A stretch of DNA of 64,000 nt, taken from Schmidtea nova (lineage: Eukaryota). A program made the translations under genes and the position numbers. Of this stretch, positions 28,129-53,031 are shown piece by piece (within the stretch, counting starts at the first letter, position 1; each line of letters opens with the position of its first letter). The notes beneath the pieces were generated by a model that was given only the letters and a program-made list of their open reading frames with translations, made no database searches and had not been told where the DNA came from. The stretch spans positions 136,896,001 to 136,960,000 of the forward strand of contig CM097883.1 in assembly GCA_044892505.1 (NCBI GenBank), in the 5' to 3' direction.

Positions 28129-28134
<6 letters not shown>

Positions 28135-28705
28135 CGGTTTCGGATGGGTTAAAACAAAAATAGAAAATGAATTAACAATTATTTTTAAACGCTCTAGGGA
28201 TTCCTCCATCCAAGACCTAACATAAAATGCTTACATATCACACGAGCACCCTCGATCATTTCCCTGTAATAATCGAGTTGGAAATGTGCAAGGTGTTTGA
28301 ACAATGATGGGCAGGTGAGCTCTATTGCTAAAACTACTCCCCATTTATGTTCACGGGTTCGTCTCGCTGCCGATAGAAGGACTTACGCTTTACTTTTATC
28401 TAATCGCATTCCTCATCTTTCATTTTAATTATTTCTTTTCTGCCCCCTGTCTTTATAATAATTCAATTTTTCTTTCAGCCCCCTTCTTTGCAATATCAAC
28501 AAATAATCTTTAATCAATTATAATATGTTATTTCTTTAATACTCTTATTGTTTATTATATTTATGTCAATCCTATTGTTAATTCTAATTTATATTTAATT
28601 CATTTGAAATTTTTAATAAATTACTTTATCTCATATACTTTACAATAAACTAAATACAAAGCAAAAATTAATTAATAAGCACAAATTTACAAATCACAAA
28701 AATTC

Positions 28706-29296
28706 CTATTCGAAATATTTAGTAATGTCTTCATCGGAGACTACCAAATTCATGGTTAAATCAATTTCCGGAATTTCTTTTGACTGTTGTGCCAATTGCT
28801 GAAGCACTTGCTTCTTCCAGCGACGCTGACGCGCGCCCATCTTGCTCTTCTTCTTCTTTTTACATTCTGGAATGGCTATACTATTTGGTGTAATTGCTGC
28901 TGTTGTTACTTGAACCTGAGATGGTTCATCTGTGTTTGTTCCTTTCGAACATCCGGATTTCTCTTCAGCCCAATGCTGACTGGTAATGGGTCTGATGAGT
29001 TGTCTTAACTCTTGATTTAAATAAGTAGCTGTCACCGATTTTAGGCACTTTTTCAGCTCCATCTTTGTAGCATCCAGTTCCATTTGCACTTCGCTGTTTG
29101 CTCGCTGTGAACGCTGGGTTTTGAGGATTTGTGCTTTCATTTGTTCTGGACTAAACCAGCTTTTCTTCAGGTTTGAAATTATACCATCGGCTTCTTTTAG
29201 TTTTTCGGATTTTCGCAATATTTCCTTTTCGAGGCTGCGAATTATCCGCCATGCCTTATCCAATTCTGCTTGATGATTTGTTGGGTTGAATGACAT
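28706..29296 (-). CDS. LTR-encoded 196-aa coiled-coil/basic protein (intact copy)
   Basis: ATG-to-stop ORF with heptad-like N-terminal half and basic KKKKKSKMGARQRRWKK segment. A homolog is present at 813-1367. Confidence 0.65.
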   Translation of the reverse strand: MSFNPTNHQAELDKAWRIIRSLEKEILRKSEKLKEADGIISNLKKSWFSPEQMKAQILKTQRSQRANSEVQMELDATKMELKKCLKSVTATYLNQELRQLIRPITSQHWAEEKSGCSKGTNTDEPSQVQVTTAAITPNSIAIPECKKKKKSKMGARQRRWKKQVLQQLAQQSKEIPEIDLTMNLVVSDEDITKYFE

Positions 29297-30152
29297 TTTT
29301 CTAGAATTCGAGATGATTTATCAACATGAAATTTGTTATTTGGTTTAAATGTATCTCCTGCTTTCCACGACTATTACTTGCTAATTTAGGAAGAGAAAAT
29401 GATATACCTATTATACTTTCAACACTGTCGCTATGTACAGCGATCAGATACCTTCATTTACTAATATGTTTTATTTATTTACGCCTGTGCTATATACAGC
29501 AATCAGGATAAGAAATTATTTAAATACAACTCAGATCTACTGCCCTATGTACAGGGTTCAGGATAATTAATCATATTTCATTAATGATTTAGCTGTGTTG
29601 AATCTTTGATCCTATAGCCTATTGATGCTATGCTACCTGCGTGGTAGATCACTACGCTATTAAAGTTATCGATTTTGATATTGTTATATTTAAAAGTATA
29701 TTTTGTACAAATTCTTAACCGTTGTATCTGCCGCTTTATGCCCACAAACCCCAGATGTGACAATCGAAAAATATAGGTTAACATTCTATTACTCCAAAGG
29801 TGGAATCAGATTAATAATAATCACATCTATTATTATCTTATGATAAAGTTTAACTCAATCCAAATACAACTTCGTGATACTCAAAAATCTATCATTGTCT
29901 AAAAAATGAAATCAGACTTCAACTGGTTATACTATCCAGCGATAATAATAATGTTAGAAATCATGGTTAATAAAAATTCCTACCCTCTTCACGGCGCTTT
30001 ACACCGGTCGGACGGCCTAACTGTACGGAGCAGTCATTCTACTCGGCACAGTATGCCTCCATTTCACCGATTTCACGGTGATCGGAGCCCCTTGAATCAT
30101 ACGTATATCTCTACTGTAACTACTGTACATAAATAATATATATATTCGCCTC

Positions 30153-30343
30153 CTTCCACTGATTGCACAGTGGAAGAAGCTCGACCCAAAAATTATTCAT
30201 AAAAGAATATATACTTGTTCGTAATTGTTAGCATAAACTGATACTGTTGCCTCCTTCCACTGATTACACAGTGGAAGAAGCTCAATAAAGTATAAATAAC
30301 AGATAAATAGAGTCGTCTCCTTCCCCTGATTTCACATTGGAAG
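30153..30343. promoter_or_regulatory. Three dyad/hairpin repeats CTTCCACTG-N6-CAGTGGAAG in the LTR
   Basis: Copies at 30153-30176, 30254-30277 and 30320-30343 (degenerate); repeated in the 5' LTR at ~51748-51941. Confidence 0.6.
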
Positions 30344-31169
30344 AAGCTTAAATAATTCTAAATTCAAAAAAATTATAAAGCCTATATAAAACTTCATAAG
30401 ATTTATTTAGGTTTAGATAATGTTGACAGAAATCATAAAAACAATAGCAACATAAAAATCAGAAATCCATACCTGTTAGCTTCAATAAAATTGTCTCGAC
30501 AAAGTTAGCACAAAATTTGCATATAACAATAATGCTTAAAAATATCATTAACTTTAACTGAATCTGGATCAGTATTTATACTGACCAGATCAAATGCTGA
30601 ACCAATCAGCTTGAAGCCGATCATCCGACCAGCACAAATAATAAATTTTTCTAAAAAATAAAATCGATTTAATTTGTTTTAAATCGTTAACTTTTCTTGT
30701 TTTAATTTCTAAAATTTTGTAATTCTTTTTCTTTATTATTTATTTACTTCACTTTCTTTTTATTTAAATACAATTATGTATCCTTTTCTTAATACTTTTA
30801 ATAATTTCAATTCTATTTCTTCTAATTCTTGCTGTTAAATTTATATAAATTTATTACTTTTAATTCATCTTTTTCTGAAATTTCTGGTAATTATATTAAT
30901 TTTAATTTATTCTTATTTATTTCTTATTATTCTTATTATTTATGCTAAATGTGGACCAAATGGTGGATCCAACATCACTCGGGGACCCCTAAAATTGCGT
31001 CCCGCAATTAATTATACAATATTACTTATATTCAACATTCAAAAAAAAATTTTTTACGCTTGGTACATAGGTATACAGATTCACATAAGGTGAGTTTATT
31101 CTACACGTAATCACGAAGAAAATATAAAGAAAATTCAGATAATTGTTAATCAAATGTTTTGTTAAGTAA

Positions 31170-31733
31170 TTATAGTTTATACCGATAGTTCATAACTCGC
31201 ACTGGATTGGACTGGTTCTGTGGAATTGCTGGTAACTCGTATTGGGTTCGTATTCTGTTGAGGTGATTTCTCGTTTGTCTTCGGGCATTGTCATCATGTG
31301 CTGTTGTTTGATTGATAATCGATTGTTTTTGTTTAAGAACTTTTATTCTGTATACTGCAATGAGAATGGTAATTGCGCTGGTTGTTGTACTAATTGTTAA
31401 CACGATTATAATCGCAACGATCCATCTCTCTTGGTATTGAATTTCTGCTCGATGTAAATTCTTTATAGTTTCTTTACTTTCTTTTAGGGTTTTTCGAATC
31501 TTCTCTAATTTGTTATTGATTTTGCACAGGGTTTGTTGCGTTGATACTGGGTTAGGTGCTGTTGACAATTGAATTTGAGAAATTTCTTTAGCTGTTTCTT
31601 TTAATAGATTATCTATTTCTTTATAGATTTTATAGGGTAAGACTTGTAGATTTTCTTTTGATATCGGACGGTCTTCTCTTTGTTGGGTGATTTCGATCGC
31701 GTTTAGGATCATTAGGATTGCGAGCCTCTTCAT
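31170..31733 (-). CDS. Accessory ORF6, 187 aa, predicted type I membrane protein
   Basis: N-terminal MKRLAILMILNAI signal-like peptide, helical ectodomain, hydrophobic WIVAIIIVLTISTTTSAITILIAVY followed by basic residues. Confidence 0.65.
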   Translation of the reverse strand: MKRLAILMILNAIEITQQREDRPISKENLQVLPYKIYKEIDNLLKETAKEISQIQLSTAPNPVSTQQTLCKINNKLEKIRKTLKESKETIKNLHRAEIQYQERWIVAIIIVLTISTTTSAITILIAVYRIKVLKQKQSIINQTTAHDDNARRQTRNHLNRIRTQYELPAIPQNQSNPVRVMNYRYKL

Positions 31734-32034: not shown

Positions 32035-32868
32035 TTACATCATTTTTATTACTGCTTTGGTGATATCTGTCTCTTTTGGTGGTGTTAATTTTTGTATCAA
32101 CTTTTGTTTCAATTCTTCGTTTTCTTTAGTTAAATTTAATAAATTTTCCTCATAGCTTTGTTTTGCTTCTTCCAATCTTTCTTTAGTTTTCTTTAATTCT
32201 ATCTTCTTTTGAGTGATTACTCCTTGATATCCATTTATATCGCGCTTCATGTCTTCCTCTTTCTGCATCCCTGCTCTGATTTGTGCGTCTACTTGTTGTT
32301 GACTAAGATATAGTTCTCTCCCTGTTATTTCAATCTGGTGTCTAAATTGTTTGATTTTCTTTGCTTGATCTCTGATGAATTGTTGTCTCTTTTTGTTCCA
32401 TTTTTTACTCGATATTTCCTGATAGGTTTTCTGTTCTAATTCCTCTTTTAATTTATCGATTTCTTCAAAAAATTTCCAATCATCACTGTACGCCGTTCTC
32501 TCAATTATTTCTCTTGCTTTCGTATAAGCTTCTTTCGCTTCTTTTTTCCAATATCTTGCTTGCTCGGTAATGGAGTACATTTTTCGTTCCATTTCTGTTC
32601 GTTCTCGCTCTCTTTCTTCTCGTCGTTCTTTCATCATCTTTTTATAATATTCTTTTTGTTTCTCCAATAATTCATATAGTTCGTCTATTTTATCTTGACT
32701 TAATCGCTTTAATCTTTTGGCTTCTTTTATTTGTTCGGCTTGTCTTTCTACTTCTTTTTGTTTGTGGTAATATGCGTGGATCCAACTTTCAATTTGTTCT
32801 AAATGCTCACAAATAACTTCATCTTGATGTGCGGTAACTTCTTGTAAACTGATTTCGACGTTTCCCAT
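32035..32868 (-). CDS. Accessory ORF5, 277-aa coiled-coil protein (MG- start)
   Basis: E/K/Q-rich heptads. The frame stays open for 42 more codons after the TAA. Confidence 0.7.
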   Translation of the reverse strand: MGNVEISLQEVTAHQDEVICEHLEQIESWIHAYYHKQKEVERQAEQIKEAKRLKRLSQDKIDELYELLEKQKEYYKKMMKERREERERERTEMERKMYSITEQARYWKKEAKEAYTKAREIIERTAYSDDWKFFEEIDKLKEELEQKTYQEISSKKWNKKRQQFIRDQAKKIKQFRHQIEITGRELYLSQQQVDAQIRAGMQKEEDMKRDINGYQGVITQKKIELKKTKERLEEAKQSYEENLLNLTKENEELKQKLIQKLTPPKETDITKAVIKMM

Positions 32869-32973: not shown

Positions 32974-34407
32974 CTACGCCAACCATCCTTTTCTATCTGC
33001 CTTCTCGTTCCTTTCCATTTCTATGTATAAGGTATCCTCATACAATAATCCCCATATCTTGCTTTGTAATACAAAGTATGGTTCTCCACTTGCTAATCCA
33101 CATTCTTCTGTTGGTCTATTGCTCGTATCTACTCCTTTTTCTGTCGTGAATCTCTTTTCTATGGTTTCGTTTAAACCCCTGATTTTTATTATTACTCCTA
33201 CTCCTATTGGCCATTCGATTAAATCGTCATATTCTCCTTTGCAAAACGCAAAGAATATCGATACGTGTTTTCCAATACCTTTTCCATCTCCGTTTGGATA
33301 TACTTTCAATCTCACTTTAGCCCCGTTTTTCCATAAGTAAAATGGTGGGCTTATTACCGCAACTTTCTTGAAGCTTCTTGCATCTTCTAATTTATTTCGA
33401 AAATCCGTTATTTTCCACACATAAGGTGCTATTGGTAAATCTTTTTTCTCATCAATTTCTTGTATTAATTTGTTATATTGCACTTTCATTCCTTTTGCTA
33501 ATTCCTTGATGGCTATTATTTTCTTTTCCATCTTTTCTCGGGTTAATTCAAATTGTTCTCTCGTTTCTAATAATAGGTTCATCATTATTTTATGAGATTC
33601 TACTTCCTTTTCTAATTTCTGAATTGTTCTGTCTGTCATTTCAATATGATTGATTGCTTCTGTTTCTAAATGTTGTTTCATAGTTTGTTGAGATTTCTTT
33701 TCTTTGCATCCATATCTGTTGTAAGGACATTCTCTTGATATTTCTGTACACTTTTCCCAATGTTCTCGTAATTTCACTTCTTCGGTAGTTTCACATTTGT
33801 TTGGGCACACTCCTACATACTGTTCGCATATTTTCTCTTCTTTTATATTGATGTGCTCCTCTTCAATTTTTCTCCTTGTTTCTCGAATTTCGCAATATTC
33901 ACATGCGATTTCTTCCTCTTTGCATCCATCTCTGTGTTTCTCTTTGTCTTTTAAAATTATCGTTTCTTTACACTTTTCACATTCGCTTCTCTTTTCTTCA
34001 CAATTTTCTATATGATTTTCAATTTCGCTGATTTGTCCTTGCCATATGCACGGTGGATTTATACATTCAATTAATATGCTCATGATTTCTCTCTGAGTTG
34101 CTCTATCTGGTCTTGTTTCGTCTACCACTATTTGTCCTTCTTTACATTCTGGGCATTCTGTAATTCTCTTTAACTCTAACATTTGTACACATCTAGTGCA
34201 TAATCTACATCCACAGGCGGTTTGCTTTGGTTTTCGTAATAAATTATTACAATATCCACATAAAAATCTCTTGTTCCAATTTCTGTTTGCTGCTCTCAAA
34301 ATCTCGACTGCTCGTTCCTCTTTATCCATTTCTACAATAATATATACATACATTGATTTGTTCTTTGTTTTTGATTTTTCTAGAGTTTTATTTTTACATA
34401 TATACAA
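32974..34407 (-). CDS. TRAF-family protein (RING, TRAF zinc fingers, coiled coil, MATH); likely start ATG 34329
   Basis: CGYC..PKQTACGCRLCTRC..CPEC RING; CEYC..H..C and CPN.C..H..C zinc fingers; MATH motif YVWKITDF..SPPFY..KVRLKVYPNGDG.G.GKHVSIFF..GEYDDLIEWP. Confidence 0.9.
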   Translation of the reverse strand: MYICKNKTLEKSKTKNKSMYVYIIVEMDKEERAVEILRAANRNWNKRFLCGYCNNLLRKPKQTACGCRLCTRCVQMLELKRITECPECKEGQIVVDETRPDRATQREIMSILIECINPPCIWQGQISEIENHIENCEEKRSECEKCKETIILKDKEKHRDGCKEEEIACEYCEIRETRRKIEEEHINIKEEKICEQYVGVCPNKCETTEEVKLREHWEKCTEISRECPYNRYGCKEKKSQQTMKQHLETEAINHIEMTDRTIQKLEKEVESHKIMMNLLLETREQFELTREKMEKKIIAIKELAKGMKVQYNKLIQEIDEKKDLPIAPYVWKITDFRNKLEDARSFKKVAVISPPFYLWKNGAKVRLKVYPNGDGKGIGKHVSIFFAFCKGEYDDLIEWPIGVGVIIKIRGLNETIEKRFTTEKGVDTSNRPTEECGLASGEPYFVLQSKIWGLLYEDTLYIEMERNEKADRKGWLA

Positions 34408-34425: not shown

Positions 34426-34761
34426 CTATGGTTCGCTCGTTGAATCTGGTTCCATACCATTCTCTAATCCATTTATTACCCAATCTAGCCATTGACCTTC
34501 TGATTCATCTCTTCTTGATAGTTGATTCATTTCCACTGTTTGTCTTAATCTCTGATTCTCTCTTGTTAGTTCTGTTATTATTCTCTGTTGCTCTTCTATT
34601 TTATGTAATTGTTCAAAAATATTGTTGTAACAATCTGCTAATATATTTTGCTTCTCTACCAGTTGATTCTGTAGTGTATTCATTGATCGAACTAACGTTT
34701 CACATTGTGCTTTCCATCGCATAATCATAGTCATTTCGGTTGTTTCTTCTCGTACATTCAT
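34426..34761 (-). CDS. Accessory ORF3, 111-aa coiled-coil protein
   Basis: ATG-initiated, Q/E/L heptads (LQNQLVEKQNIL..ITELTRENQRLRQ), packed between ORF2 and the TRAF gene. Confidence 0.55.
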   Translation of the reverse strand: MNVREETTEMTMIMRWKAQCETLVRSMNTLQNQLVEKQNILADCYNNIFEQLHKIEEQQRIITELTRENQRLRQTVEMNQLSRRDESEGQWLDWVINGLENGMEPDSTSEP

Positions 34762-34883: not shown

Positions 34884-37800
34884 CTATACTATCATCACTG
34901 CCTTTTCATCGTGTCGCTCCTCGTCTTCTATTTGCTTCCAAAATTCTTTGCCTTTGGTTCTTCTTTGGAATTCTTTCTTTACTTCTTCTGGTATTTTGAT
35001 TTTACAATTCATAATCTTTATATCTGGCCATTGTCTGGTTGGTTTCCTTTTTATTATGTCCCATAGCCATATTATTGATAATATTATTATTACTGGTACG
35101 CCTACTGCTAGTATTCCTACTCCAATTAATTCTCTTCTTTGCTTGTTAACATTGATTTGGGTGAATTTGCTCTGATTGATCATTGGTCCATATTGTCCTT
35201 TTAATTTGAGTTCCAATTGTTGTTGCTCTTGTTGTTTCCTTTTGACTTCCTGGATTACTTTTTCTGGTTTCCATTGTGCATAAGAATCTATTATTGTTTC
35301 CTCGTTTTCCATTTGTTTCGTTGTTTGATTCAGTTCTCCGAAGGTTAGCTTCTTGATTCTTCCTTTGATTGTTGTATTTGTCGATGTATAGTAGTTTCCA
35401 CATTTTTCTTGCTGGTTTCCAAATTTATCTGCCTTCTCTATTGCGCATATTTCGTATTGTTTGTCCAATTGTAGGTTCTGAATTCTGATCTCCTCTTCTT
35501 TATTCATCTTTTCGCATTGTTGTGGTTGTCTTTCTTCGTATTTCTTGATCATTGTCCAACATATTTCCACTGTTTTGTCATCTAATTTCCAAAGTATAAG
35601 TGTTGCTGAGGTTTTCCTCTCTGGTTCTGTTTGACTTTCGGTAGTGGTATGCTTCGGTTTTTGTTGACTTTTATTCTTTCGTATTGCTTTAATGGTTTTT
35701 ACTCTGTTCGGTGCTTTGTATATTCTGCATTCTAAATCTTCTTTCGTAATTTGATCATTTTCCTTTATTAGGCATATTTCATAAGTTTGATTTCTTTCTA
35801 AGCTTTTTATTTGTACTGCAGTTGTTCCTTTGACTGTTTGACATTGTGATGATTTATGTTTATTCGTTTCTTTCTCGTATTTTCTCCAGCATACTCCGTT
35901 TACGTTTTGTTCTATTCCCGTTATTTCTAACGTTATGGTTAATTTCTGGAAATTCTGGTTGTTTCTTTTCCCCATTTTTCTTGCAAACGTTATTATTTTC
36001 CCTGCTTGGAATGTTTTACAATTGGTTATTCCTTTCTTGTTTCTCTCTTTTTCCAATAAACATAGTTTATGAATTCTGTCTGTTTTTATCTTTATTATCT
36101 TGATTACTTTGTTCGTTTTACCCGCTTCCAGTTTCTGAATTTCTCTTGATTCCTTTAATTCTAATTTTTCATCGTTTCTAAACCAACATTTTTGATTTGT
36201 CATTTGTGTCTCTTCCATGTCTATTAATGTCATTGTATCCGTCTCTATTCCTTCTTCTAATCGCTTCAGTATTGTCATAATAAGTGCTATACATAACAAC
36301 TTGGAATTATAGATTACTCTTGTGGTTTGTTTCGTTCGTCTTTTTAGTTCTGGTTTATCCGTTGTATTTCTTATACTTGGTGTCGTTATCTTGGTTCTTG
36401 GTGGTTGTAAGGCTTTTCTTGATGCTGGTGCTCTTGTTATTTTAAAATAAATTGGTCCTGGAAGGTCTATTCCATTGGTGAACTCGTATCGAACTTTGGG
36501 TGTCTTGTATACTTGGCATGTAACTGTTTTGTGTGATTTTACGTCTTTGGGTTTTCTGATTGTACATATTCTGTACCATGTTTCCATATCCATTTCGTCG
36601 ATTATTATGGTCTTTCGCTCGGGGTTTGGGATTATACATCGTAATAGGTTGTTATCTCCGAGAATTTCATTCTCTTTTACCCAACATACTTGTTCAATGT
36701 ATTTTGAATTCATTATTTGTGTTGATGCTTTTTGTATTGGTACTTCCATTTCCACTGATATCTCTTGTTCCGTTGCTTCACATTGTCCCATAAGTGTTAT
36801 GATTATTGCAAACATTAATACTTCTGGTCTGAATAATGGATTCCTTCTGTAACTTGTTCCTTTCTTTCCATGATTGCTTTTAGGGTTGTCTTCTCTTTGT
36901 TCTTTGGATTCGTGGTTCTTTGTATTTCTCTCTTGATTCTCATCTTCTTTGTTGGTTTGTTCGTGGTTATCTGGGTTTCCGTGATTATTTTCATCATCAT
37001 CGTCTTTATTTCTCTCGTCGTCCTTGCTTTCTTCATCGTCATCCTCATTGTTAGTATTATTATCTCCCCCTGGCTCGTTAAAAATGTCGTCCTCGACATT
37101 ACTTGTTTCTATTAGTTTTGCATAATATAGTGATGTCAAGTTACTTGCTTCGAATTCTTGGAATTCTATATCTTCGGGTATCTTTTTGTTGTCTAACTGA
37201 TACTGTATAATTTCTTTCTTGGCTTTTATCCAACTTTGGAGGTGTGTTCTCATCAGTTCTTTCCATTTGACTACCTTTTCCGTTTCTTTAGGCTTGTTTG
37301 TAAATCTCAGATCTTCTCTTCTCATGAAAATTTCTACAATTTCGGGCCATATATAAGTTATGAGTGCGCTTTTGATACACCAATTTCGATTATTCTCCAT
37401 AAACTTGTTGACTTTAAATGCTGGTTTATTTGTATTTGGTATTTTCCAGTTTAATACTTCTTCTGTCAATTTGATGTTTTGCATCATTGTCAATACGCTT
37501 GGTCCTTTTACGGTTTCTGTTAAATAATCTATTTCTTCCTGGTTTGTTATCGTTTTAATGAAATTCAACATTTCCCAGTTTGGACCTAATAATGTCACGT
37601 CTAATATTGAGTTGTCTTTGCTAGTTTTTCCGATTAATCCTGCGCCTGCTTTATATAACTCTTCTAATACTTTGATTTTTGTTTTTGCTCTTGCTGCGTA
37701 TACCATAAGGGTGTCTCCTTTTTCGTCTATCATATTCATATCACATCCACATTGATGCATTAATTTTGCGATTTCGATTACTTTGCTGTCTTTTCCTGCT

Positions 37801-38147
37801 CTCAATGCTCTATGAATCGGCATTATTCTTTCTTTTGTTAATAAAAACGCAACTGGCATTTCTCTTTTTATAGTTATTATATCATCTCCATTATATATTC
37901 CTTTCGCGTACGCGTGTACCTTTTCTACTATCGCGCCAAGTATTTCTAAGGCGTATTTAGTATTTTTGAATTCTGGTAATAGTTCCTTTGCTTTTTTGTG
38001 TATTGCATCTAATCTTTCTTGGTAATCTATCTTCGCGTTGAACAATGGTGTGAGTATCCTTTTACTTTCTTCTTCTTTCTGATTTATTGCTTGATTAAAT
38101 TTTTGTAGCTTGTGTCTTTGCGTATTTGTTTTTGACACCATACCCAA
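34884..38147 (-). CDS. ORF2 (~1085 aa): ankyrin repeats, acidic linker, signal-like segment, four Cys-containing FN3-like repeats, C-terminal TM
   Basis: DMNMIDEKGDTLMVYAA ankyrin; VLMFAIIITLMGQCEA signal-like segment; repeated CW..C..I.I..L...Y.IC..C..Y modules; LIGVGILAVGVPVIIILSIIWLW TM. In the -1 frame, overlapping the ORF1 end. Confidence 0.8.
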   Translation of the reverse strand: MGMVSKTNTQRHKLQKFNQAINQKEEESKRILTPLFNAKIDYQERLDAIHKKAKELLPEFKNTKYALEILGAIVEKVHAYAKGIYNGDDIITIKREMPVAFLLTKERIMPIHRALRAGKDSKVIEIAKLMHQCGCDMNMIDEKGDTLMVYAARAKTKIKVLEELYKAGAGLIGKTSKDNSILDVTLLGPNWEMLNFIKTITNQEEIDYLTETVKGPSVLTMMQNIKLTEEVLNWKIPNTNKPAFKVNKFMENNRNWCIKSALITYIWPEIVEIFMRREDLRFTNKPKETEKVVKWKELMRTHLQSWIKAKKEIIQYQLDNKKIPEDIEFQEFEASNLTSLYYAKLIETSNVEDDIFNEPGGDNNTNNEDDDEESKDDERNKDDDDENNHGNPDNHEQTNKEDENQERNTKNHESKEQREDNPKSNHGKKGTSYRRNPLFRPEVLMFAIIITLMGQCEATEQEISVEMEVPIQKASTQIMNSKYIEQVCWVKENEILGDNNLLRCIIPNPERKTIIIDEMDMETWYRICTIRKPKDVKSHKTVTCQVYKTPKVRYEFTNGIDLPGPIYFKITRAPASRKALQPPRTKITTPSIRNTTDKPELKRRTKQTTRVIYNSKLLCIALIMTILKRLEEGIETDTMTLIDMEETQMTNQKCWFRNDEKLELKESREIQKLEAGKTNKVIKIIKIKTDRIHKLCLLEKERNKKGITNCKTFQAGKIITFARKMGKRNNQNFQKLTITLEITGIEQNVNGVCWRKYEKETNKHKSSQCQTVKGTTAVQIKSLERNQTYEICLIKENDQITKEDLECRIYKAPNRVKTIKAIRKNKSQQKPKHTTTESQTEPERKTSATLILWKLDDKTVEICWTMIKKYEERQPQQCEKMNKEEEIRIQNLQLDKQYEICAIEKADKFGNQQEKCGNYYTSTNTTIKGRIKKLTFGELNQTTKQMENEETIIDSYAQWKPEKVIQEVKRKQQEQQQLELKLKGQYGPMINQSKFTQINVNKQRRELIGVGILAVGVPVIIILSIIWLWDIIKRKPTRQWPDIKIMNCKIKIPEEVKKEFQRRTKGKEFWKQIEDEERHDEKAVMIV

Positions 38148-41100: not shown

Positions 41101-44100
41101 CGAACTCTGCTTCATTTAATAATTGTAATTGGCATTCATTCGCTTTTGCTCTGTATGTTAAGGTCGACATACCGGTTTGACAGGTACTGGCTTCAATTTT
41201 ACACATTGATAACGTCTTCATTTCTCCTGTTGCTGGGTCAAAATATGCTTCATATGCTTTTAATTCTACCGTATACGTGTCTATTACTACCATGTTAGTT
41301 GCTGGTACTCCAAATATCGGATATGTTGCTCCTTGACAGTAACCTTCTCCTCCTGTGATAGCTCCTGCTACATAATAAGTTTGTTGTAGTATTACTCCAA
41401 CTTTTCCTTTTATCTTTATTCGATCTCTTGTTTCGACTTCTCCATGTCTAAACAATTTATTGCAATCTTCTCCTTGTAACATTATCGCTTCTCTTTCCGT
41501 TCCTGGCATTACGATTGCAGAGTAGTGGCGATGTCCACAATAAAAAGCGAATCTTGTTTTATATATTTTACACTCGTTAACTGTTGTCTTTATTAATTCG
41601 GCTTCCTGATATACGTGATATATTTGTTTACTATGTAATACTTTTAATTCTGTTGGAGTTGCATCTTTGCATTGTTCGGTTCCTCTTAATGAATATTTTT
41701 CTCCTAATGCCATCTGGTCGCAATCAAATACTTCGAACGTTGTTGCTCCTTCAACGCTAATTAGCCATATTAATATCATCATTATGATTGAATTCAGGTT
41801 TAGTGAAGATTTTCCACTTCCTGTTCCTGACTTTTCTTTTTCTAATTCCCCTAAAATTTCTTCAAATTTCTTTTTCATATTCTTTGCTTGACCGTTTCTT
41901 TGATTCGTTTTAGCAAATGTTTCCCATCCTCCTTTACTGATGACGTATGGCTCTATTTCTCTTGTTATGATACTTGCTGTATTTTTGATATGCTTCTCTA
42001 TTGCCGTAGATTTTGGATTACCTCTACTCAATGTTAATAAGTTATAAATTGTATACGCAATTGCTATCACATATTTATTATCATTTTCTGCATCTTCAGT
42101 TAACCTCTTTATCAACGTTGTGGTCCCTTGCCAATCTAAATGGCTTGATTTTGTCTTTTCTTTTATTAGTTCGGGTAAGATTGGTGCGATTGCGCTATGT
42201 AATGCTTTAGCCTTGTCGCTTATTTCGTTTATTCTCCACCATTTTTTCAATTCTGGATCAATTATCGCCAGTATTTCCATTAATGCTTTTGATATCCATC
42301 CTTCGCCTTGACATTTTTGCGTTGTTTCTTTGTCTTTGGCTTCTGCTATTTTGTTAAGTTTCTTTAAACATATTTCCCATTTCTCTTGTCTCCTTTCCTC
42401 TTTGGTTTTGTTGATTGTGTTTGCTGGACCTGTCTTTGGTCTACCTCTAGATCGTTTATCCATTGTTGTACCTGTTTCAATCAATCTGGTTTCTCGTCCG
42501 GTTTCTTCTGTAATATCTCTTGGTTCGTTATTTCTCTGTTCCCACCATTTTTCCATTTCTTGTGTTAATCGTTCGTTTTCTGTATTTGCTCCTCTTGCTT
42601 CTTCTTCAGAGATTTCGTTCACTTCTTCTATCTCTATTTCTTGCTCAACTTCATTTTGGGTATTGATTGCTTGTGATGTTGTGGGTAACTCTTGTACTCT
42701 TTCGAAAATATTATTGCCTTTTTCTTTTGTCAAATTAGTTAATTCTTCTAGCATATCATCGCTGTCTGTTAAGATCTCTTCTACTCCGTATGGTTGTGGT
42801 AGTGTTCTTTCTTGAACTTTAATTGATGTTGTTTCGTATTGTCCTGCGCTTGTTCCTGGCTTTATCTGCATCGTCTTTCTTGGTTTCTGAGTGTCTTCAC
42901 TTTCTTTTACTCTTTTCTCTTTAAGTGTTAATGGTTGACCTGCTATTGCGTCTACTGTTAACGTATTTGCCAGTTCTAACTGTGCTGGCGTTATCCAAAT
43001 TTCCATATCGTTTTCTAATGATCGTCCTTGATGTTGTAGATGAAATGGTGGTTCATATTTTAATCTCTTTTTAACATCCCGAATCTTTTCAGTTAATCTT
43101 ACCCAAAGCTCTTCTTTTTCTCGATCTGGATATATTATCCTTAAATGTATTTTCTGCGGTGGTTCTTGGGAGTTTTCCTGGTTTCTCCATTTCTTGATTA
43201 CATTGCCTAATTGTTCTGGGCACCACTCGTTAACTCGTTTATATTCTGCTACTGCCTTGGCTACTTTTCTTAAACTGATTATATCTTCGCCGCCTGCTAC
43301 GAAAAATTCGGCTAATCCTTTGATCGTTCGCCTTTTTCCTTGTACATTCCCTTTTAGTAATTCTATAAGTTCGTCAGCTTTTCGTCTTTGTGTTTCTAAC
43401 CATATTGCTGCGGTTTCTGGTCCATCTAAATCTGTTGGCATGACTTTTCTTGTCACCATACAAACTCTTCTGATTTCTGGTTCATATTTATCTTCCATTT
43501 CTGGTCTAAATTCCTCTTCATATATACCTCCTTTTGCTTTCCAGCATTTCTCTTTAACATCCCAGTGTTTCTCTACTGGTGTTAATCGGCGTTCGTTGAA
43601 GTTTAATTCTCCTAATACATTTTCCCATTCTGGCTGTATCTGCCATCTTCGATAAATTTCAATTATTTGTCTTAGTTTGTGCATCTCTTCTCTTCGACGT
43701 TCTTGTCTCCTTTTTTCGTCTTTTGGTGTTTCTCTTGGTGTATCATCCATTCTGATGACATGAATTGTTTGGTAATTATCCCATATACCGATTTTATATA
43801 ATCGTCTCTCATCATGATCTCCTAGTACGTGTTCATTATATTTTATGATGATATCATCTTCTAATTCGTCTTCTTTTTCCCGTTGTAGTAAAGTTTCATT
43901 GATAACATCAACTAATTCTTCTACTGTGCAATCCGCGATTACTTCAATTTCTTTTGTGTCCTCGTTTGGTAATTTCACTTTGATTTTTAAATCTCCTATT
44001 TCTCCTCGTTTAAACATTGCTTTTCCCATTTTCGCGATCACTTTCCAAGTCTTGTACGGCGAATATCTCGTATGGCTGGTATCTCGTATATTTTCGATGC

Positions 44101-47100
44101 ATTGTTTTAATTTCTCATATTCAGCTTTCGTTAATTCTTCTCTATTCTTGTCGATTTGTTGAATAATTTGTTCTATTAGGGAATTTAAATTTTCTCTAAG
44201 AATTCTTTCTTTCCTTTCTGTTAACTGTGGTTTAATTCTCATCTCAAAACACATATTTGCTTCCTTTGCTATTTCTTGTAGATTCTCCTCTTTCTTATTG
44301 TCACATATTGATAATGTTGTTATCTCTCCTGGCCATATGCCTGTTTCTACCAAATGCGTTGCTCGTCTTACAAGTTCGTTTCCTGAATATATAAATTTGT
44401 TTTTATACGAACTTCCCAATCTGTCTTCTACCCATCGATAAATTTCGTTCATGCATGGAGATTTGATCCAAATTCTTGGTAAACATTCGTTTATTTCTAT
44501 TAAAATTATGTATTCGTGGAGTGGTTCTTCTAATAGTTTGACGACGTATCCTGATAATATCTCTACTTCACGACTTTGTAATCGTTCTTTATAGTTCATT
44601 CGGAATACTGCTCTTATAAATTTTCGATATCGCTTCTTATCAATAAATTCCTCGTTATAAATCACTTCTAACGCATTATCTAATAGTTTCCGAATTTCAT
44701 CTTCTTTTATTTGTATATTTTCTGGCGTCTTCGCTACTTCTATCTTGTTGTCTTCATTTTCTGGTTCTTTTAGCATATCTCCTGCTAAACTTCTGACATC
44801 ACTGTCACTTTCTACATCTGAAAATTCTCTAGTTAAGTTTCTTAACATATTTATGTGTGCTGTCTGTTCTACTTTATCTGGTACATTCTTTGGTGATATT
44901 TCTTCCTTTTTGTCATTGGTTCCTGATTCTTCTATTTGGCCTCTTCGTTTCTCTATTTCCATTGCTTTTCTCTGTTTGATTCTCTCTTCAAATATCTTCA
45001 ATGCTCTACTTTTGACTTTTGTTACTGGATTTGATTTCTCTTCATCGTTATTTTCTTCTATTTCCTGGATAACTGTGACTTTCATTTTATTCATTGGTAC
45101 TCCTAAATCTTTCCATATGTCGGTTGGTTTCAATTTTATTGCTGCTTCGTCTTCTGTCTGTAAAATTGCTTCTCGGGGTAGTTTCGTCATTCCCGGAATC
45201 GTCTTGTTTACTTTATTAATTAATACTCCTACTTCCTCTTTTTCATCATATTCAAATCGAAATACATGATCGTTTGGCATGACTACCAACATCCTTTTTT
45301 GTTCAATAACTTCTTCGTTTTCTTGTACTATTTCTTTTTGGTTTTCTTCATCCTCCGGATTTGGGTTTATCCGGTTTGTTTCTGGTTCAATATCTTCTTT
45401 GTTATCTCTTGTTTGATTCGTTGCTCTCATCATATTAATTCTCAATGGTTGTCGTTCTCTTTCTTGTCGTTTCTGTTCGTCTTCTCTTTGTATTCTTGCC
45501 CATTCTTGAGCATGTCGTGCTTGACTTTCTCGATTTAGTCGTTCATTTTCACTTTCTACTTTTCTCATCATATTCATTTGTTGTTGATTCGTTTGTTGAT
45601 TTCCTCTCGGTGTATTGTTTATTAACTCTGTTAATCTTTGAACTTCTTGTAATAAATGTATCTCCTTGGTGGTACTTTTGTTTTGATTATAACTACTCTG
45701 TTGATTTCCATAATTCTGACGGTTTCCGTTATTCTGTTGATTCACATAATTTTGTCGATTTCCGTTGTTCGACCAATTCCTTTGTTGGTTGTTTTGTTGT
45801 TGGCAGTTCCTTGCCGTATGACCTGGTTGTCCACAGTTAAAACATGATCTTTGATAACATCTATTTTCCGAATGTCCTTTCCTTCCACACGTTTTACAAT
45901 TTAAGTTCACGAAACATTCTTGTTGCCAATGTCCTAACTTTCCACAGGTTTGACATTGCTTTGTCTGTCCTTGCGTATTGTAATGATTTTGGTTTCCGAA
46001 ATTTTGTACTTTGTTTCCTTCATTTCTCCTTTGAGGTGGTGGTCGATTTAATTGCTGTGAATTCGGAATATGGTTATTTATCTTTATTGCTTGTTCGTTT
46101 TGTGTCGTATCCATTGCTAGGTAAATTCTTCCTTCGCTTCCGATCATATGTAATTCGAATCTGTTGGCGACTTCCAACGCTTCATCTATTGTCTTACAAC
46201 CTTGGCATCCAACTTGTGCTCTTATATCGGGTCTTCTCAATCCCCCCACAAAAATTGCTGCCATTAATTCTGGACTCATTGGACTATTTTGATTGAATGC
46301 TAGTTTAGCCAATTTCTTTAATTCACTTGCATATACTGCATTTGATTCATTAACTTTTTGTTTCCTCATTGAAAATTCGGTAAACGCTTCATTTAATACT
46401 TTATTTATTCCAAACGTTTGCTGGAAAAAATTCTTTATCTTTTCCCAACTATCGAGTTGATCATCTGAATTTTTAGCTTCTAAATATAAATCTAACGCAC
46501 TGTCTTTTAAATATAGCTGAATTCTGCTCCTTATCGTTTCTGGATTCCATTTACATACTTCTACAAATATACCAAATTCTTTTAAAAACGTTTCTAACTT
46601 GCTGGCATCTCCATTGAATGGTTCTCCAGTAAATTTATCTTTGATTTCTTCTTTATGTTCGTTCATTTCTATTCCACTGTCTTGTGTCGTTTTACTCTCG
46701 TTTCCTCTTGTTTCACTAGTATGCTCGTTATTCGTTTCGTTTGAATTGTTATCAATTTCTGCTTCTTCTACTTCTGTATTTATTGACTCGTTATCTGATG
46801 CTTCTGTATTATTATAATTATCGTAGGTTTCACTTGAACTTTCTTCTGTTTCACTTTCGTTAGTTTTTGTTAATTTACTGTTTTCGATTTTTGACTTTTC
46901 TACTATTACTCTTCTTGATTTACTTCCTTTAGGATTTGTTTTCTTTGTAACACTGGTTGCTCTTTGTTTCGATTTACTTCTCTGTGAATTATCAACTTTT
47001 TGAGTTGTAGCACTAACTGCTCTTGATCTCAATTTATTTCTCTGTGAATTATTAACTTCTTGGTTTTTAACTGTTCTTGATCTCGGTTTACTTTTCTTTG

Positions 47101-48699: not shown

Positions 48700-48832
48700 C
48701 TCATATTAAATTCTCATTATGAATTCTCATATTAATTCTCACTATGAGTTCTCATATTAATTCTCATTATGAATTCTCATATTAATTCTCATTATGAATT
48801 CTCATATTAATTCTCATTATGAATTTTCATAT
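48700..48832. repeat. Leader tandem array 3: 25-bp unit x~5
   Basis: ttctcatattaattctcattatgaa repeated. Confidence 0.9.
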
Positions 48833-48876
48833 TTTATTTATCACAAATAATATTACTAAATTTCAGAATTTATTTA

Positions 48877-49703: not shown

Positions 49704-49721
49704 ATCCCGGCTGAGCCCCCA
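49704..49721 (-). other. Primer-binding site complementary to the tRNA-Pro 3' end
   Basis: Minus strand TGGGGGCTCAGCCGGGAT, 16/18 identical to the canonical tRNA-Pro PBS TGGGGGCTCGTCCGGGAT, 6 nt inside the 5' LTR. Confidence 0.85.
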
Positions 49722-50304
49722 AATTTATGTTGTCGGTTTCGGATTGGTTAAAACAAAAATAGAAAATGAATTAACAATTATTTTTAAACGTTCTAGGGAT
49801 TCCTCCATCCAAGACCTAACATAAAATGCTTACATATCACACGAGCACCCTCGATCATTTCCCTGTAATAATCGAGTTGGAAATGTGCAAGGTGTTTGAA
49901 CAATGATGGGCAGGTGAGCTCTATTGCTAAAACTACTCCCCATTTATGTTCACGGGTTCGTCTCGCTGCCGATAGAAGGACTTACGCTTTACTTTTATCT
50001 AATCGCATTCCTCATCTTTCATTTTAATTATTTCTTTTCTGCCCCCTGTCTTTATAATAATTCAATTTTTCTTTCAGCCCCTTTCTTTGCAATATCAACA
50101 AATAATCTTTAATCAATTATAATATGTTATTTCTTTAATACTCTTATTGTTTATTATATTTATGTCAATCCTATTGTTAATTCTAATTTATATTTAATTC
50201 ATTTGAAATTTTTAATAAATTACTTTATCTCATATACTTTACAATAAACTAAATACAAAGCAAAAATTAATTAATAAGCACAAATTTACAAATCACAAAA
50301 ATTC

Positions 50305-50894
50305 CTATTCGAAATATTTAGTAATGTCTTCATCGGAGACTACCAAATTCATGGTTAAATCAATTTCCGGAATTTCTTTTGACTGTTGTGCCAATTGCTG
50401 AAGCACTTGCTTCTTCCAGCGACGCTGACGCGCGCCCATCTTGCTCTTCTTCTTCTTTTTACATTCTGGAATGGCTATACTATTTGGTGTAATTGCTGCT
50501 GTTGTTACTTGAACCTGAGATGGTTCATCTGTGTTTGTTCCTTTCGAACATCCGGATTTCTCTTCAGCCCAATGCTGACAGGTAATGGGTCTGATGAGTT
50601 GTCTTAACTCTTGATTTAAATAAGTAGCTGTCACCGATTTTAGGAACTTTTTCAGCTCCATCTTTGTAGCATCCAGTTCCATTTGCACTTCGCTGTTTCT
50701 CGCTGTGAGCGCTGGGTTTTGAGGATTTGTGCTTTCATTTGTTCTGGACTAAACCAGCTTTTCTTCAGGTTTGAAATTATACCATCGGCTTCTTTTAGTT
50801 TTTCGGATTTTCGCAATATTTCCTTTTCGAGGCTGCGAATTATCCGCCATGCCTTATCCAATTCTGCTTGATGATTTGTTGGGTTGAATGACAT
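50305..50894 (-). pseudogene. Frameshifted copy of the LTR ORF
   Basis: cgctgtttctcgc here vs cgctgtttgctcgc in the 3' LTR. The 1-bp deletion splits the ORF into 80-aa and 127-aa pieces. Confidence 0.85.
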
Positions 50895-52170
50895 TTTTCT
50901 AGAATTCGAGATGATTTATCAACATGAAATTTGTTATTTGGTTTAAATGTATCTCCTGCTTTCCACGACTATTACTTGCTAATTTAGGAAGAGAAAATGA
51001 TATACCTATTATACTTTCAACACTGTCGCTATGTACAGCGATCAGATACCTTCATTTACTAATATGTTTTATTTATTTACGCCTGTGCTATATACAGCAA
51101 TCAGGATAAGAAATTATTTAAATACAACTCAGATCTACTGCCCTATGTACAGGGTTCAGGATAATTAATCATATTTCATTAATGATTTAGCTGTGTTGAA
51201 TCTTTGATCCTATAGCCTATTGATGCTATGCTACCTGCGTGGTAGATCACTACGCTATTAAAGTTATCGATTTTGATATTGTTATATTTAAAAGTATATT
51301 TTGTACAAATTCTTAACCGTTGTATCTGCCGCTTTATGCCCACAAACCCCAGATGTGACAATCGAAAAATATAGGTTAACATTCTATTACTCCAAAGGTG
51401 GAATCAGATTAATAATAATCACATCTATTATTATCTTATGATAAAGTTTAACTCAATCCAAATACAACTTCGTGATACTCAAAAATCTATCATTGTCTAA
51501 AAAATGAAATCAGACTTCAACTGGTTATACTATCCAGCGATAATAATAATGTTAGAAATCATGGTTAATAAAAATTCCTACCCTCTTCACGGCGCTTTAC
51601 ACCGGTCGGACGGCCTAACTGTACGGAGCAGTCATTCTACTCGGCACAGTATGCCTCCATTTCACCGATTTCACGGTGATCGGAGCCCCTTGAATCATAC
51701 GTATATCTCTACTGTAACTACTGTACATAAATAATATATATATTCGCCTTCTTCCACTGATTGCACAGTGGAAGAAGCTCGACCCAAAAATTATTCATAA
51801 AAGAATATATACTTGTTCGTAATTGTTAGCATAAACTGATACTGTTGCCTCCTTCCACTGATTACACAGTGGAAGAAGCTCAATAAAGTATAAATAACAG
51901 ATAAATAGAGTCGTCTCCTTCCCCTGATTTCACATTGGAAGAAGCTTAAATAATTCTAAATTCAAAAAAATTATAAAGCCTATATAAAACTTCATAAGAT
52001 TTATTTAGGTTTAGATAATGTTGACAGAAATCATAAAAACAATAGCAACATAAAAATCAGAAATCCATACCTGTTAGCTTCAATAAAATTGTCTCGACAA
52101 AGTTAGCACAAAATTTGCATATAACAATAATGCTTAAAAATATCATTAACTTTAACTGAATCTGGATCAG

Positions 52171-52204
52171 TATTTATACTGACCAGATCAAATGCTGAAC
52201 CAAT
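52171..52204 (-). promoter_or_regulatory. Candidate LTR promoter: TATAAATA inside a palindrome plus CCAAT box
   Basis: Minus-strand TATAAATA at 52178-52171 within ctgg-a-tcagtat-tt-atactga-ccag; aaccaatcag ~22 nt upstream. Same arrangement at 30573-30606. Confidence 0.4.
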
Positions 52205-53031
52205 CAGCTTGAAGCTGATCATCCGACCAGCACAAATAATAAATTTTTCTAAAAAATAAAATCGATTTAATTTGTTTTAAATCGTTAACTTTTCTTGTTT
52301 TAATTTCTAAAATTTTGTAATTCTTTTTCTTTATTATTTATTTACTTCACTTTCTTTTTATTTAAATACAATTATGTATCCTTTTCTTAATACTTTTAAT
52401 AATTTCAATTCTATTTCTTCTAATTCTTGCTGTTAAATTTATATAAATTTATTACTTTTAATTCATCTTTTTCTGAAATTTCTGGTAATTATATTAATTT
52501 TAATTTATTCTTATTTATTTCTTATTATTCTTATTATTTATGCTAAATATTGACCAAATGGTGGATCCAAGTAATTTTCATGGAAGAAGTTCGATGAGCA
52601 CACAAAAGCCACAGTAGGTATTTTGGAAAGATATTCAACCATCACTAGTATCCTTAGTCAACTTATACTTAGTATCTAATATCAAAGGAAAGAGTGAAAT
52701 GGGGCTTCAAGACAATAATATTTTGCAAAAAATTTGAAAAGTTTTTTTTTCATTTATGCTTGGTCCTATGTGTTATATTACTTCTATAAAGCATGTAGAA
52801 TTTTTAGACAAAATAAGTAACAATTTTTATGAAATTGAAAAACAAGCAAAGATGACAAAGTTAAGAGAAAGAAAATGACGGGGATGAAAATACTCTCTAC
52901 AAAAGATAAATTATCTTTTTTTGTTGAAAAATAAAATGTTAAACAAAAATATAATTCACTGAATATTTTCTATATTAATTAAAATTTAAAAAGTCTTAAA
53001 AATATATTAAATAAATTATTAAAATAAATAT

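What the first reader, a model, noticed from the sequence alone, without database searches (positions are those of the whole stretch)
28129..52570. Young 24.4-kb giant LTR element with capsid, protease, envelope and host-modulator genes but no RT, RNase H or integrase
Seen: the 2.85-kb LTRs differ at only a handful of sites, the PBS is intact, and the 18.75-kb interior is filled by mostly open ORFs plus a non-coding leader. No YxDD, RNase H or integrase motif is present and there is no space for them. Established: LTR pairs are homogenised by reverse transcription and inserted by integrase, so the enzymes came in trans or were lost after insertion. Inference: this is the structural/accessory half of a two-component virus-like system, supplying Gag, protease, fusion protein and host-control factors and borrowing RT/IN from a partner. 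Typical non-autonomous LTR elements (LARD/TRIM) lose coding capacity rather than keep ~15 kb of ORFs. From memory, giant Burro gypsy elements of planarians are the closest described class; I recall those encoding RT/IN (not verified).
Basis: partly seen in the sequence, partly recalled or inferred. Interest (0 to 1): 0.93.

Follow-up and report, generated by a model that had tools for sequence, protein, structure and literature searches.

The report
Pol-less copy of Burro-type giant retroelement
This is a real, young 24.4-kb retrovirus-like element on the minus strand that keeps capsid, envelope, protease and host-like regulator genes but has lost reverse transcriptase, RNase H and integrase; it looks like a deleted copy of the known giant "Burro" elements of planarians, not a new kind of two-part virus.

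Summary
Two 2.85-kb LTRs (28124-30972, 49723-52570) are 99.58% identical. An 18-nt primer-binding site is a perfect complement of a tRNA-Pro 3' end. The 18.75-kb interior, on the minus strand, is almost filled by open frames.

These encode Gag (Retrotrans_gag plus three CCHC knuckles), an in-frame mononegavirus-type fusion glycoprotein, one retroviral protease, ankyrin repeats, a full TRAF-like protein and an IAP-type RING protein.

No RT, RNase H or integrase is detectable in any of the six frames by Pfam, PDB sequence search, tblastn or a family-specific pol profile. That profile did find an unrelated RT/RNase H scrap outside the element, so the test works.

The gag–env–protease order with ankyrin, TRAF and RING modules is the published architecture of Burro/GYPSM1 in Schmidtea mediterranea, which does carry PR-RT-RH-IN. 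Every long relative I retrieved (25-39% identity over the long env matches) carries RT-RH-IN after the protease.

The most economical reading is a pol-deleted, now non-autonomous Burro-type copy. The "two-component system" idea is untested, because no sister copies were reachable. No target-site duplication was found, and the source organism was not identified.

The parts
49723..52570 (-). 5' LTR (element orientation)
   Evidence: 2849-nt direct repeat, 99.58% identical to 28124-30972
49704..49721 (-). Primer-binding site, complementary to the tRNA-Pro 3' end
   Evidence: Unique in the window, 0 expected by chance. Exact complement of the 3' end plus CCA of tRNA-Pro(CGG) genes on L019 and L046
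48877..49338 (-). Upstream accessory ORF, 153 aa, IAP/XIAP-type C-terminal RING
   Evidence: Pfam zf-C3HC4_3, E 2e-10. PDB XIAP/cIAP RING, E 3e-9. Homologous RING ORF at the 3' end of relative L001
47624..48833 (-). Leader tandem-repeat arrays (41-nt and 25-nt units)
   Evidence: Tandem Repeats Finder, scores 265-838. Burro elements are drawn with tandem repeats (PMC6431247, Fig. 2 legend)
34884..47032 (-). Polyprotein coding region. Two long open frames (2982 and 1087 codons) in -1 relation with a short open overlap. One frame change; the pol block (RT-RH-IN) is absent
   Evidence: the ORF listing. No stops inside either frame. Overlap and slippery-like heptamer. No pol signal
45797..46666 (-). 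Gag: capsid-like domain (Retrotrans_gag, 46235-46516) and three CCHC zinc knuckles, counted from the first Met
   Evidence: Pfam on the piece: Retrotrans_gag E 3.4e-5, 24.4 bits; zf-CCHC E 8e-12. Three C-x2-C-x4-H-x4-C motifs. Collinear with the gag ORFs of L001 and L002. Faint PNMA2/Arc capsid hits with the family profile
39860..41809 (-). Envelope: mononegavirus-type fusion glycoprotein, in frame within the polyprotein
   Evidence: Pfam PF24664, E 6.6e-71, profile positions 4-593 of 653. 25-39% identity over the long (about 600-930 aa) env matches to relatives. Hydrophobic segments at both ends and 15 Cys
39125..39397 (-). Retroviral aspartic protease (single copy)
   Evidence: Pfam RVP, E 2e-7. 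D-S/T-G-A/S motif present. Best match is the protease of P0157, E 3e-17
38378..38782 (-). Ankyrin repeats after the protease
   Evidence: Pfam Ank_2, E 1e-11 on the piece. PDB DARPin and Kidins220 hits. A PR-Ank module is collinear with P0151 residues 1638-1963
37563..37835 (-). Second ankyrin block, near the start of the 1087-codon frame. The rest of that frame (about 890 aa) has no recognisable domain
   Evidence: PDB DARPin hits, E 5e-9. Pfam Ank_2 weak. No homologues found. AF2 model unusable, pLDDT 35
32974..34407 (-). TRAF-like accessory ORF (RING and zinc fingers, zf-TRAF, MATH/TRAF-C). First ATG at 34353
   Evidence: Pfam MATH_2 E 3e-20, zf-TRAF E 2e-7. PDB TRAF3/2/5 TRAF-C E 1e-20; TRAF5/6 RING-ZF E 7e-14
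34426..34761 (-). Small ORF, 111 aa, possibly coiled-coil, function unknown
   Evidence: the ORF listing. Only sub-threshold Pfam hits, mostly to helical or coiled-coil families
32035..32868 (-). Accessory ORF, 277 aa, no recognisable domain
31170..31733 (-). Accessory ORF, 187 aa, with one hydrophobic segment (aa 103-128), no recognisable domain
28124..30972 (-). 3' LTR. The likely TG...CA unit starts at 28129 on the + strand

Best explanation
The element is a pol-less copy of a Burro-type giant, envelope-bearing Ty3/gypsy-like endogenous retrovirus of an AT-rich animal genome. The host is probably a dugesiid planarian, but that was not verified.

It was made by reverse transcription primed from tRNA-Pro, and its LTRs have hardly diverged since. 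It keeps Gag, an in-frame mononegavirus-type fusion glycoprotein, one protease, ankyrin modules, a TRAF-like ORF, an IAP-type RING ORF and several ORFs of unknown function. The RT-RNase H-integrase block that follows the protease in its relatives is missing.

It therefore cannot copy or insert itself. The enzymes that made this copy came from a pol-bearing relative. Either the deletion arose during reverse transcription inside a parental particle, or an already deleted RNA was copied in trans.

Shown: the anatomy, the absence of pol, the PBS, and the presence of pol in relatives. Inferred: the loss (rather than primary absence), its timing, the host, and any later mobility.
For: - LTR pair 99.58% identical over 2849 nt.
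- Perfect 18-nt tRNA-Pro PBS.
- Domain content and order.
- The order gag(3 CCHC) ... env in frame ... PR, with Ank, MATH/TRAF, RING motifs and leader tandem repeats, is what PMC6431247 describes for Burro1/GYPSM1 of S. mediterranea, which carries PR-dUTPase-RT-RH-IN.
- Seven long relatives from ENA/JGI/NCBI contigs all show Env-PR-RVT_1-RT_RNaseH-integrase.
- These relatives are collinear with the window in gag, env and PR. L002 has LTRs 20.15 kb apart.
- No pol signal in any frame of the element, with a working positive control.
- Size arithmetic, suggestive only: the two long frames sum to 4069 codons against 4873 aa for Burro1 ORF1. The roughly 800-aa difference equals the 810-900-aa PR-end-to-IN-end span in relatives.
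Against: - No reference Burro sequence and no sister copy could be compared, so family membership rests on architecture and on relatives only 25-39% identical over the long env matches.
- The source organism was not identified.
- No target-site duplication, so a clean integration event is not documented. The copy could be a recombinant of two insertions, in which case LTR identity does not date it.
- Burro1 has MATH/TRAF inside ORF1, whereas here it is a separate downstream ORF. BIR, BCL2-like, SUMO-like and dUTPase motifs reported for Burro were not detected; only a faint ubiquitin-like hit was seen.
- Giant repeats are hard to assemble (PMC11410931), so an assembly artefact is not excluded.
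Confidence: 0.75

Rival explanations
1. Helper-dependent lineage. A pol-less Burro derivative has itself multiplied, is kept open by selection for Gag, Env, protease and host-modulating genes, and relies on RT/IN from an autonomous Burro family. That would make it a satellite-like two-component system.
For: - All remaining frames are open over more than 12 kb in a 34% GC sequence.
- The PBS is perfect and the LTRs are nearly identical.
- The frame stays open from the protease into the ankyrin module.
- The two long frames overlap in -1 relation with an in-register slippery-like heptamer, as in retroviral gag-pol junctions.
- An RT/RNase H scrap of a gypsy-like element 2.6 kb away shows that pol-bearing elements exist in this genome.
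Against: - No second copy was seen, so there is no shared junction, no copy number and no dN/dS.
- Openness is explained by youth alone.
- The slippery heptamer is expected by chance about 0.2 times in that overlap.
- The nearby RT scrap is degenerate and cannot be tied to this family.
Confidence: 0.15
2. Post-insertion genomic deletion. A complete, autonomous Burro-type copy inserted here and lost its pol block afterwards by illegitimate recombination in the chromosome. This would be a private lesion with no bearing on mobility.
For: - Relatives all carry pol.
- Deletions in inserted LTR elements are commonplace (general knowledge).
- One further frame change is present in the polyprotein region.
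- The ends lack a TSD, so the locus has seen other changes, and an (AT)19 microsatellite abuts the 3' LTR.
Against: Only about 0.4% LTR divergence leaves little time for such a deletion. Everything other than pol is intact. Neither point is decisive.
Confidence: 0.25
3. Assembly artefact. The pol block is present in the organism but was dropped when reads from many near-identical giant copies were collapsed or joined.
For: Burro elements longer than 30 kb are named as a reason planarian genomes are hard to assemble (PMC11410931). No TSD was found.
Against: The frame stays open from the protease into the ankyrin module, and the LTR pair and interior are coherent. There are no N runs in the window.
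Confidence: 0.05

Closest known systems
Burro / GYPSM1 giant gypsy-like LTR retroelements of Schmidtea mediterranea and Burro-like elements of other Dugesiidae (Jurka 2007; Grohme et al. 2018; reviewed in PMC6431247)
   Same: - Giant size with kilobase LTRs.
- Gag with Retrotrans_gag and three CCHC knuckles at the start of a huge polyprotein.
- Mononegavirus-like env in frame between gag and protease.
- Ankyrin, MATH/TRAF and RING modules, accessory ORFs and tandem repeats in the leader.
- AT-rich host sequence.
   Different: - No dUTPase-RT-RNase H-integrase.
- TRAF is a separate downstream ORF, not part of ORF1.
- BIR and BCL2-like motifs were not detected.
- Total length is 24.4 kb rather than more than 30 kb.
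- Sequence identity to Burro1-4 could not be measured.
Uncharacterised giant env-bearing gypsy-like elements on metagenome contigs (L001 and L002 from ENA ERZ25039515; L003 from JGI 3300033082; HBK71150.1, filed under a Flavobacteriaceae MAG)
   Same: Collinear gag, Monjiviricetes-type env and protease, 25-39% identity over the long env matches. L001 has a PR-Ank module and an IAP-type RING accessory ORF. L002 has LTRs 20 kb apart.
   Different: All carry RVT_1, RT_RNaseH, Integrase_H2C2 and rve, often several protease copies and an RNase_T accessory ORF. Their post-integrase tails are unrelated to the window's 1087-codon frame.
Non-autonomous LTR retrotransposons: TR-GAG, LARD and TRIM (plants); helper-dependent deleted retroviruses and the ETn/MusD pair (from general knowledge)
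   Same: LTRs and PBS retained and polymerase functions missing, so any copying must use enzymes from an autonomous relative. TR-GAG elements also keep gag.
   Different: Those elements are short or non-coding, or keep gag alone. This one keeps more than 12 kb of open frames, including env, protease and host-like genes. No evidence yet that it forms a family.
LTR elements that captured glycoproteins of negative-strand RNA viruses (for example chuvirus-like G in insect Bel/Pao elements; recalled from memory, not checked here)
   Same: An envelope gene of mononegavirus type inside an LTR retroelement.
   Different: In those elements env is a separate ORF after pol. Here, as in Burro, it sits in frame between gag and protease.

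Membership tests
Burro-type giant gypsy-like retroelement | Giant LTR element (interior up to 25 kb) with long LTRs | tested here: met
   24.4 kb in total, 2.85-kb LTRs, 18.75-kb interior
Burro-type giant gypsy-like retroelement | N-terminal Gag with retrotrans_gag motif followed by two or three CCHC knuckles | tested here: met
   Retrotrans_gag at 24.4 bits, just over the 24.1 cut-off; three knuckles
Burro-type giant gypsy-like retroelement | Mononegavirus-like env in frame between gag and protease | tested here: met
   PF24664, E 6.6e-71, in the same frame as gag and RVP
Burro-type giant gypsy-like retroelement | PR-(dUTPase)-RT-RNase H-integrase block | tested here: not met
   Protease present. 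No dUTPase, RT, RNase H or integrase in any frame
Burro-type giant gypsy-like retroelement | Host-like regulatory modules (ankyrin, MATH/TRAF, RING; also BIR, BCL2-like, SUMO-like) | tested here: inconclusive
   Ank, full TRAF and IAP-type RING found. BIR, BCL2-like and SUMO-like not found; only a faint UBX-like hit, E 0.02
Burro-type giant gypsy-like retroelement | Sequence identity to reference Burro1-4 / GYPSM1; host in Dugesiidae | not testable with these tools
   No reference sequence or planarian genome is in the searchable collections. The host-gene search gave no flatworm hit
Ty3/gypsy (Metaviridae) LTR retroelements | RT phylogeny and PR-RT-RH-IN order | tested here: not met
   This copy has no RT to place. 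Relatives carry RVT_1, RT_RNaseH, Integrase_H2C2 and rve in gypsy order
Ty3/gypsy (Metaviridae) LTR retroelements | LTRs with TG...CA ends, a tRNA-complementary PBS and a 4-6-bp target-site duplication | tested here: inconclusive
   TG...CA ends and a perfect tRNA-Pro PBS are met. The TSD is absent
Non-autonomous LTR elements: LARD / TRIM | No protein-coding capacity (LARD) or miniature size (TRIM) | tested here: not met
   More than 12 kb of open frames with recognisable domains
Non-autonomous LTR elements: TR-GAG | LTRs plus gag as the only coding domain, present as a multi-copy family | tested here: not met
   Gag is present, but so are env, protease and accessory genes. Copy number could not be tested

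The most novel reading that the evidence does not exclude
A pol-less Burro lineage that has multiplied as such: a giant 'satellite provirus' that supplies its own capsid, envelope, protease and host-signalling mimics (TRAF, IAP-RING, ankyrin) and borrows only RT and integrase from autonomous Burro elements. It might express its downstream frame through a -1 shift.
Probability: 0.15. Interest if true: 0.75.

Novelty: new variant of a known kind. Interest (0 to 1): 0.35.

Why it matters
Burro elements are among the largest retrovirus-like elements known and make up a large share of planarian genomes. Their unusual polyprotein, which mixes viral structural genes with mimics of host apoptosis and ubiquitin signalling, is not understood.

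A young copy that has lost only the polymerase-integrase block shows which parts stay intact without it. If such copies prove to form a family, this would be an unusually gene-rich example of a helper-dependent retroelement in an animal.

As a single copy it is an ordinary defective provirus. Its main practical value is for annotation: pipelines that look for RT will miss it.

Tried and rejected
- Hidden pol in another frame or strand: rejected. A six-frame pol profile, tblastn and motif scans found nothing.
- Hidden, very divergent pol inside the unannotated roughly 1330-aa and 890-aa stretches: piecewise Pfam and PDB searches were negative. AF2 single-sequence models were unusable (pLDDT 35 and 37), so no fold search was run.
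- Sister copies or the source genome: nothing was found in any of these attempts.
  - Word-index protein searches.
  - Exact look-ups of nine window proteins.
  - Protein-guided scans of metagenome, viral and prokaryotic genome contigs.
- Host identification with the neighbouring G-patch/GCFC ORF: only a plant hit and a beetle hit.
- Anchoring the missing block with relatives' post-integrase tails: they are lineage-specific beyond about 200 aa and unrelated to the window's second frame.
- Rfam and tRNA scans of the window: empty.
- Grohme et al. 2018 could not be read; it is not held.
- Programmed -1 frameshift between the two long frames: an in-register slippery-like heptamer exists, but it is expected by chance about 0.2 times. 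Left open.

Full report
**1. Observation**

A self-comparison of the window gives one long direct repeat pair, 28124-30972 and 49723-52570. It has 2849 aligned positions, 11 mismatches and one gap, which is 99.58% identity and a Jukes-Cantor distance of 0.0039. The interior is 18,750 bp.

Composition (AT skew about -0.4 from 32 to 48 kb) and the ORF list show that the element reads on the minus strand. The 5' LTR is therefore the right-hand one.

Just past the 5' LTR lies an 18-mer at 49704-49721 (minus strand), 1 nt beyond the aligned repeat and 6 nt beyond its likely CA end. It is unique in the window, with none expected by chance. A scan of metagenome contigs with its 16 inner bases hit the exact 3' ends of two eukaryote-type tRNA-Pro(CGG) genes (L019, L046). 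Reading L019 shows that the 18-mer is the perfect complement of the last 15 encoded bases plus CCA. The PBS is intact and names the primer.

No 4-6-bp target-site duplication exists at any plausible boundary. An (AT)19 microsatellite abuts the 3' LTR.

**2. Coding content (element orientation)**

- **Leader.** It holds a 153-aa ORF with an IAP/XIAP-type RING and three tandem-repeat arrays, so it is not simply non-coding.
- **Polyprotein region (34884-47032).** Two long open frames of 2982 and 1087 codons stand in -1 relation with a short open overlap.
  - *Gag.* From the first methionine: a capsid-like Retrotrans_gag domain, 24.4 bits against a cut-off of 24.1 when scanned as a piece, plus three CCHC knuckles.
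  - *Unannotated stretch.* About 1330 largely helical residues with no recognisable domain apart from a faint ubiquitin-like hit.
  - *Envelope.* A complete Monjiviricetes-type fusion glycoprotein, E 6.6e-71, bracketed by a signal-like and an anchor-like hydrophobic segment.
  - *Protease.* One retroviral aspartic protease with its D-S/T-G motif.
  - *Ankyrin repeats.*
  - *Second frame.* It starts with more ankyrin repeats. About 890 further residues match nothing.
- **Downstream ORFs.**
  - A small ORF of 111 aa, possibly coiled-coil.
  - A full-length TRAF-like protein with RING and zinc fingers, zf-TRAF and MATH/TRAF-C; PDB TRAF3/2/5 at E 1e-20.
  - Two ORFs of 277 and 187 aa without recognisable domains.

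**3. Is pol really absent?**

Yes, as far as sequence methods can see.

- Pfam at E<=10 on whole ORFs shows no RVT, RNase H, rve or dUTPase.
- Pfam on overlapping 300-400-aa pieces shows none either. Piecewise scanning is demonstrably more sensitive here, because it recovered Retrotrans_gag.
- PDB sequence searches show none.
- tblastn with ten, and then seven more, related proteins found only gag, env and protease inside the element.
- A profile built from the pol segments of six relatives was run against every stop-to-stop piece of at least 25 codons in all six frames of the window. Its best E-value inside the element was 0.74.
- The same profile detected an unrelated RT/RNase H scrap outside the element (55149-55903, minus strand) at E 5.5e-20 (Pfam RT_RNaseH_2). 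That scrap is a positive control for the method.

**4. What it is related to**

The exhaustive representative search with the env-PR-Ank part returned 1246 hits. The best long ones were 25-42% identical and came from ENA, JGI and NCBI metagenome contigs.

Every long relative whose predicted protein extends past the protease has the order Env, then PR (one to four copies), RVT_1, RT_RNaseH, Integrase_H2C2/rve, then a long tail. The contigs show giant elements:

- L001 has a 923-aa gag ORF, a 4844-aa polyprotein, and RNase_T and RING accessory ORFs.
- L002 has LTRs 20.15 kb apart.

The window is collinear with them in gag, env, protease and the RING ORF. One relative, P0151, has a PR-Ank module followed by another protease and then RT-RH-IN. 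Beyond about 200 residues, the tails after integrase are unrelated between lineages and unrelated to the window's second frame.

**5. Comparison with the literature**

PMC6431247 describes Burro1/GYPSM1 of Schmidtea mediterranea as follows:

- A 4873-aa ORF1 begins with Gag (retrotrans_gag plus three CCHC knuckles).
- It has a mononegavirus-like env in frame between gag and pol.
- It carries PR-dUTPase-RT-RH-IN.
- It also has ankyrin, MATH_TRAF_C, RING (AIR1), BIR, BCL2-like and Smc motifs.
- Accessory ORFs may alternatively sit inside the polyprotein, and tandem repeats are present.

The window element has this unusual architecture, including the three knuckles, but not the pol block.

The two long frames sum to 4069 codons. 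The shortfall of about 800 against Burro1 equals the 810-900-residue span from protease end to integrase end in the relatives. This is suggestive only, because TRAF is placed differently here.

Burro1 is reported as abundant and active, and is controlled by SMEDWI-2 (PMC8532177). I could not read Grohme et al. 2018 and found no description of pol-less Burro copies.

**6. Mechanism**

*Shown.* The element has all cis features for reverse transcription (LTRs, tRNA-Pro PBS) and open gag, env and protease. It has no polymerase, RNase H or integrase.

*Inferred.* It descends from a pol-bearing Burro-type element and is non-autonomous. The enzymes that produced it came from such an element. Either the loss arose during reverse transcription in a parental particle, or an already deleted RNA was copied in trans.

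A loss after insertion is the main alternative. I cannot distinguish between them without sister copies.

The other ORFs are open. Whether the frame change is a lesion or a programmed -1 shift is open; an in-register slippery-like heptamer lies in the overlap, but about 0.2 are expected by chance.

Open frames do not need selection to explain them. At roughly 0.2% change per LTR since insertion, I estimate about 19 substitutions and 1-2 indels in the long frame. Intactness is then only mildly unlikely, on the order of 0.1. This is my estimate and not a formal test.

**7. The two-component reading**

Nothing here contradicts it and nothing supports it beyond the anatomy. I put it at about 0.15.

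It needs a census of copies, junctions and substitution patterns in the source genome, which these tools cannot reach.

**8. Limits and a declared slip**

- The organism was not identified. 'Planarian' rests on AT-richness and the Burro-like architecture.
- Membership in Burro proper is architectural, not sequence-based.
- Slip: my early notes and script outputs list the bounds of the two long ORFs as the ORF tool printed them. That implicitly places the single frame change. I noticed this later, left the notes as they are, and give the polyprotein region as one part in this report.
- I built a search profile (HMM) from relatives' pol segments for detection only. The consensus line printed by the alignment tool was not used.

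**9. Verdict**

The element is a pol-less variant of a known kind of giant retroelement. Interest is moderate to low unless a family of such copies is shown.

Noticed in passing
window 55149-55903 (-), with direct repeat 55042-55341 / 55371-55670: A fragment of a gypsy-like RT/RNase H (RT_RNaseH_2, E 3e-11; 36-46% identical to the pol of the Burro-like relatives) lies 2.6 kb outside the 5' LTR, on the same strand. It is tandemly duplicated with a 329-bp period and sits just upstream of the G-patch ORF. It shows that pol-bearing gypsy-like elements exist in this genome. It is not part of the element.
   Followed up: partly
window 53032-54984 (-): A 650-aa single-exon ORF with G-patch and GCFC domains (TFIP11/septin-and-tuftelin-interacting-like), presumably a host gene. 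Its best database matches were only a plant protein and a beetle protein, so it did not identify the organism.
   Followed up: partly
window 25659-27170 (+): A 503-aa ORF with an N-terminal RING-H2 finger lies 1 kb from the 3' LTR on the opposite strand. Whether it is a host gene or a stray accessory gene of another element is unknown.
   Followed up: no
window 11751-12767 and 15368-16048 (+), array at 14364-14956: Two exons of a DEAD-box RNA helicase (DEAD, Helicase_C and an SPB4-like C-terminal extension). A tandem array with 34/79-nt spacing lies in the intervening sequence.
   Followed up: no
window 19345-21545 (-): ORFs of 515 and 222 aa. The larger has DUF4371, a domain typical of hAT-transposase-derived proteins, so this is probably a DNA-transposon remnant or a domesticated copy.
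   Followed up: no
window 28092-28129: An (AT)19 microsatellite directly abuts the 3' LTR end. No target-site duplication can be recognised at the element's ends.
   Followed up: yes
protein P0005 (HBK71150.1), 9-kb contig: A 2627-aa Env-PR-RT-RH-IN polyprotein of this giant retroelement group is deposited as a hypothetical protein of a Flavobacteriaceae MAG. It is almost certainly a misbinned animal contig.
   Followed up: no
L001 21702-22841 and L002 16542-17882: The pol-bearing relatives carry an RNase_T (DEDD exonuclease) accessory ORF after the polyprotein. The window element has no counterpart.
   Followed up: no
window 28706-29296 (-) against the same stretch of the 5' LTR: A 196-aa ORF lies inside the 3' LTR and is not kept open at the same length in the 5' LTR, so it is probably not a gene.
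   Followed up: no
window 4629-4846 and 6850-7067: A 218-nt direct repeat pair at 80% identity, 2.2 kb apart. Not examined.
   Followed up: no
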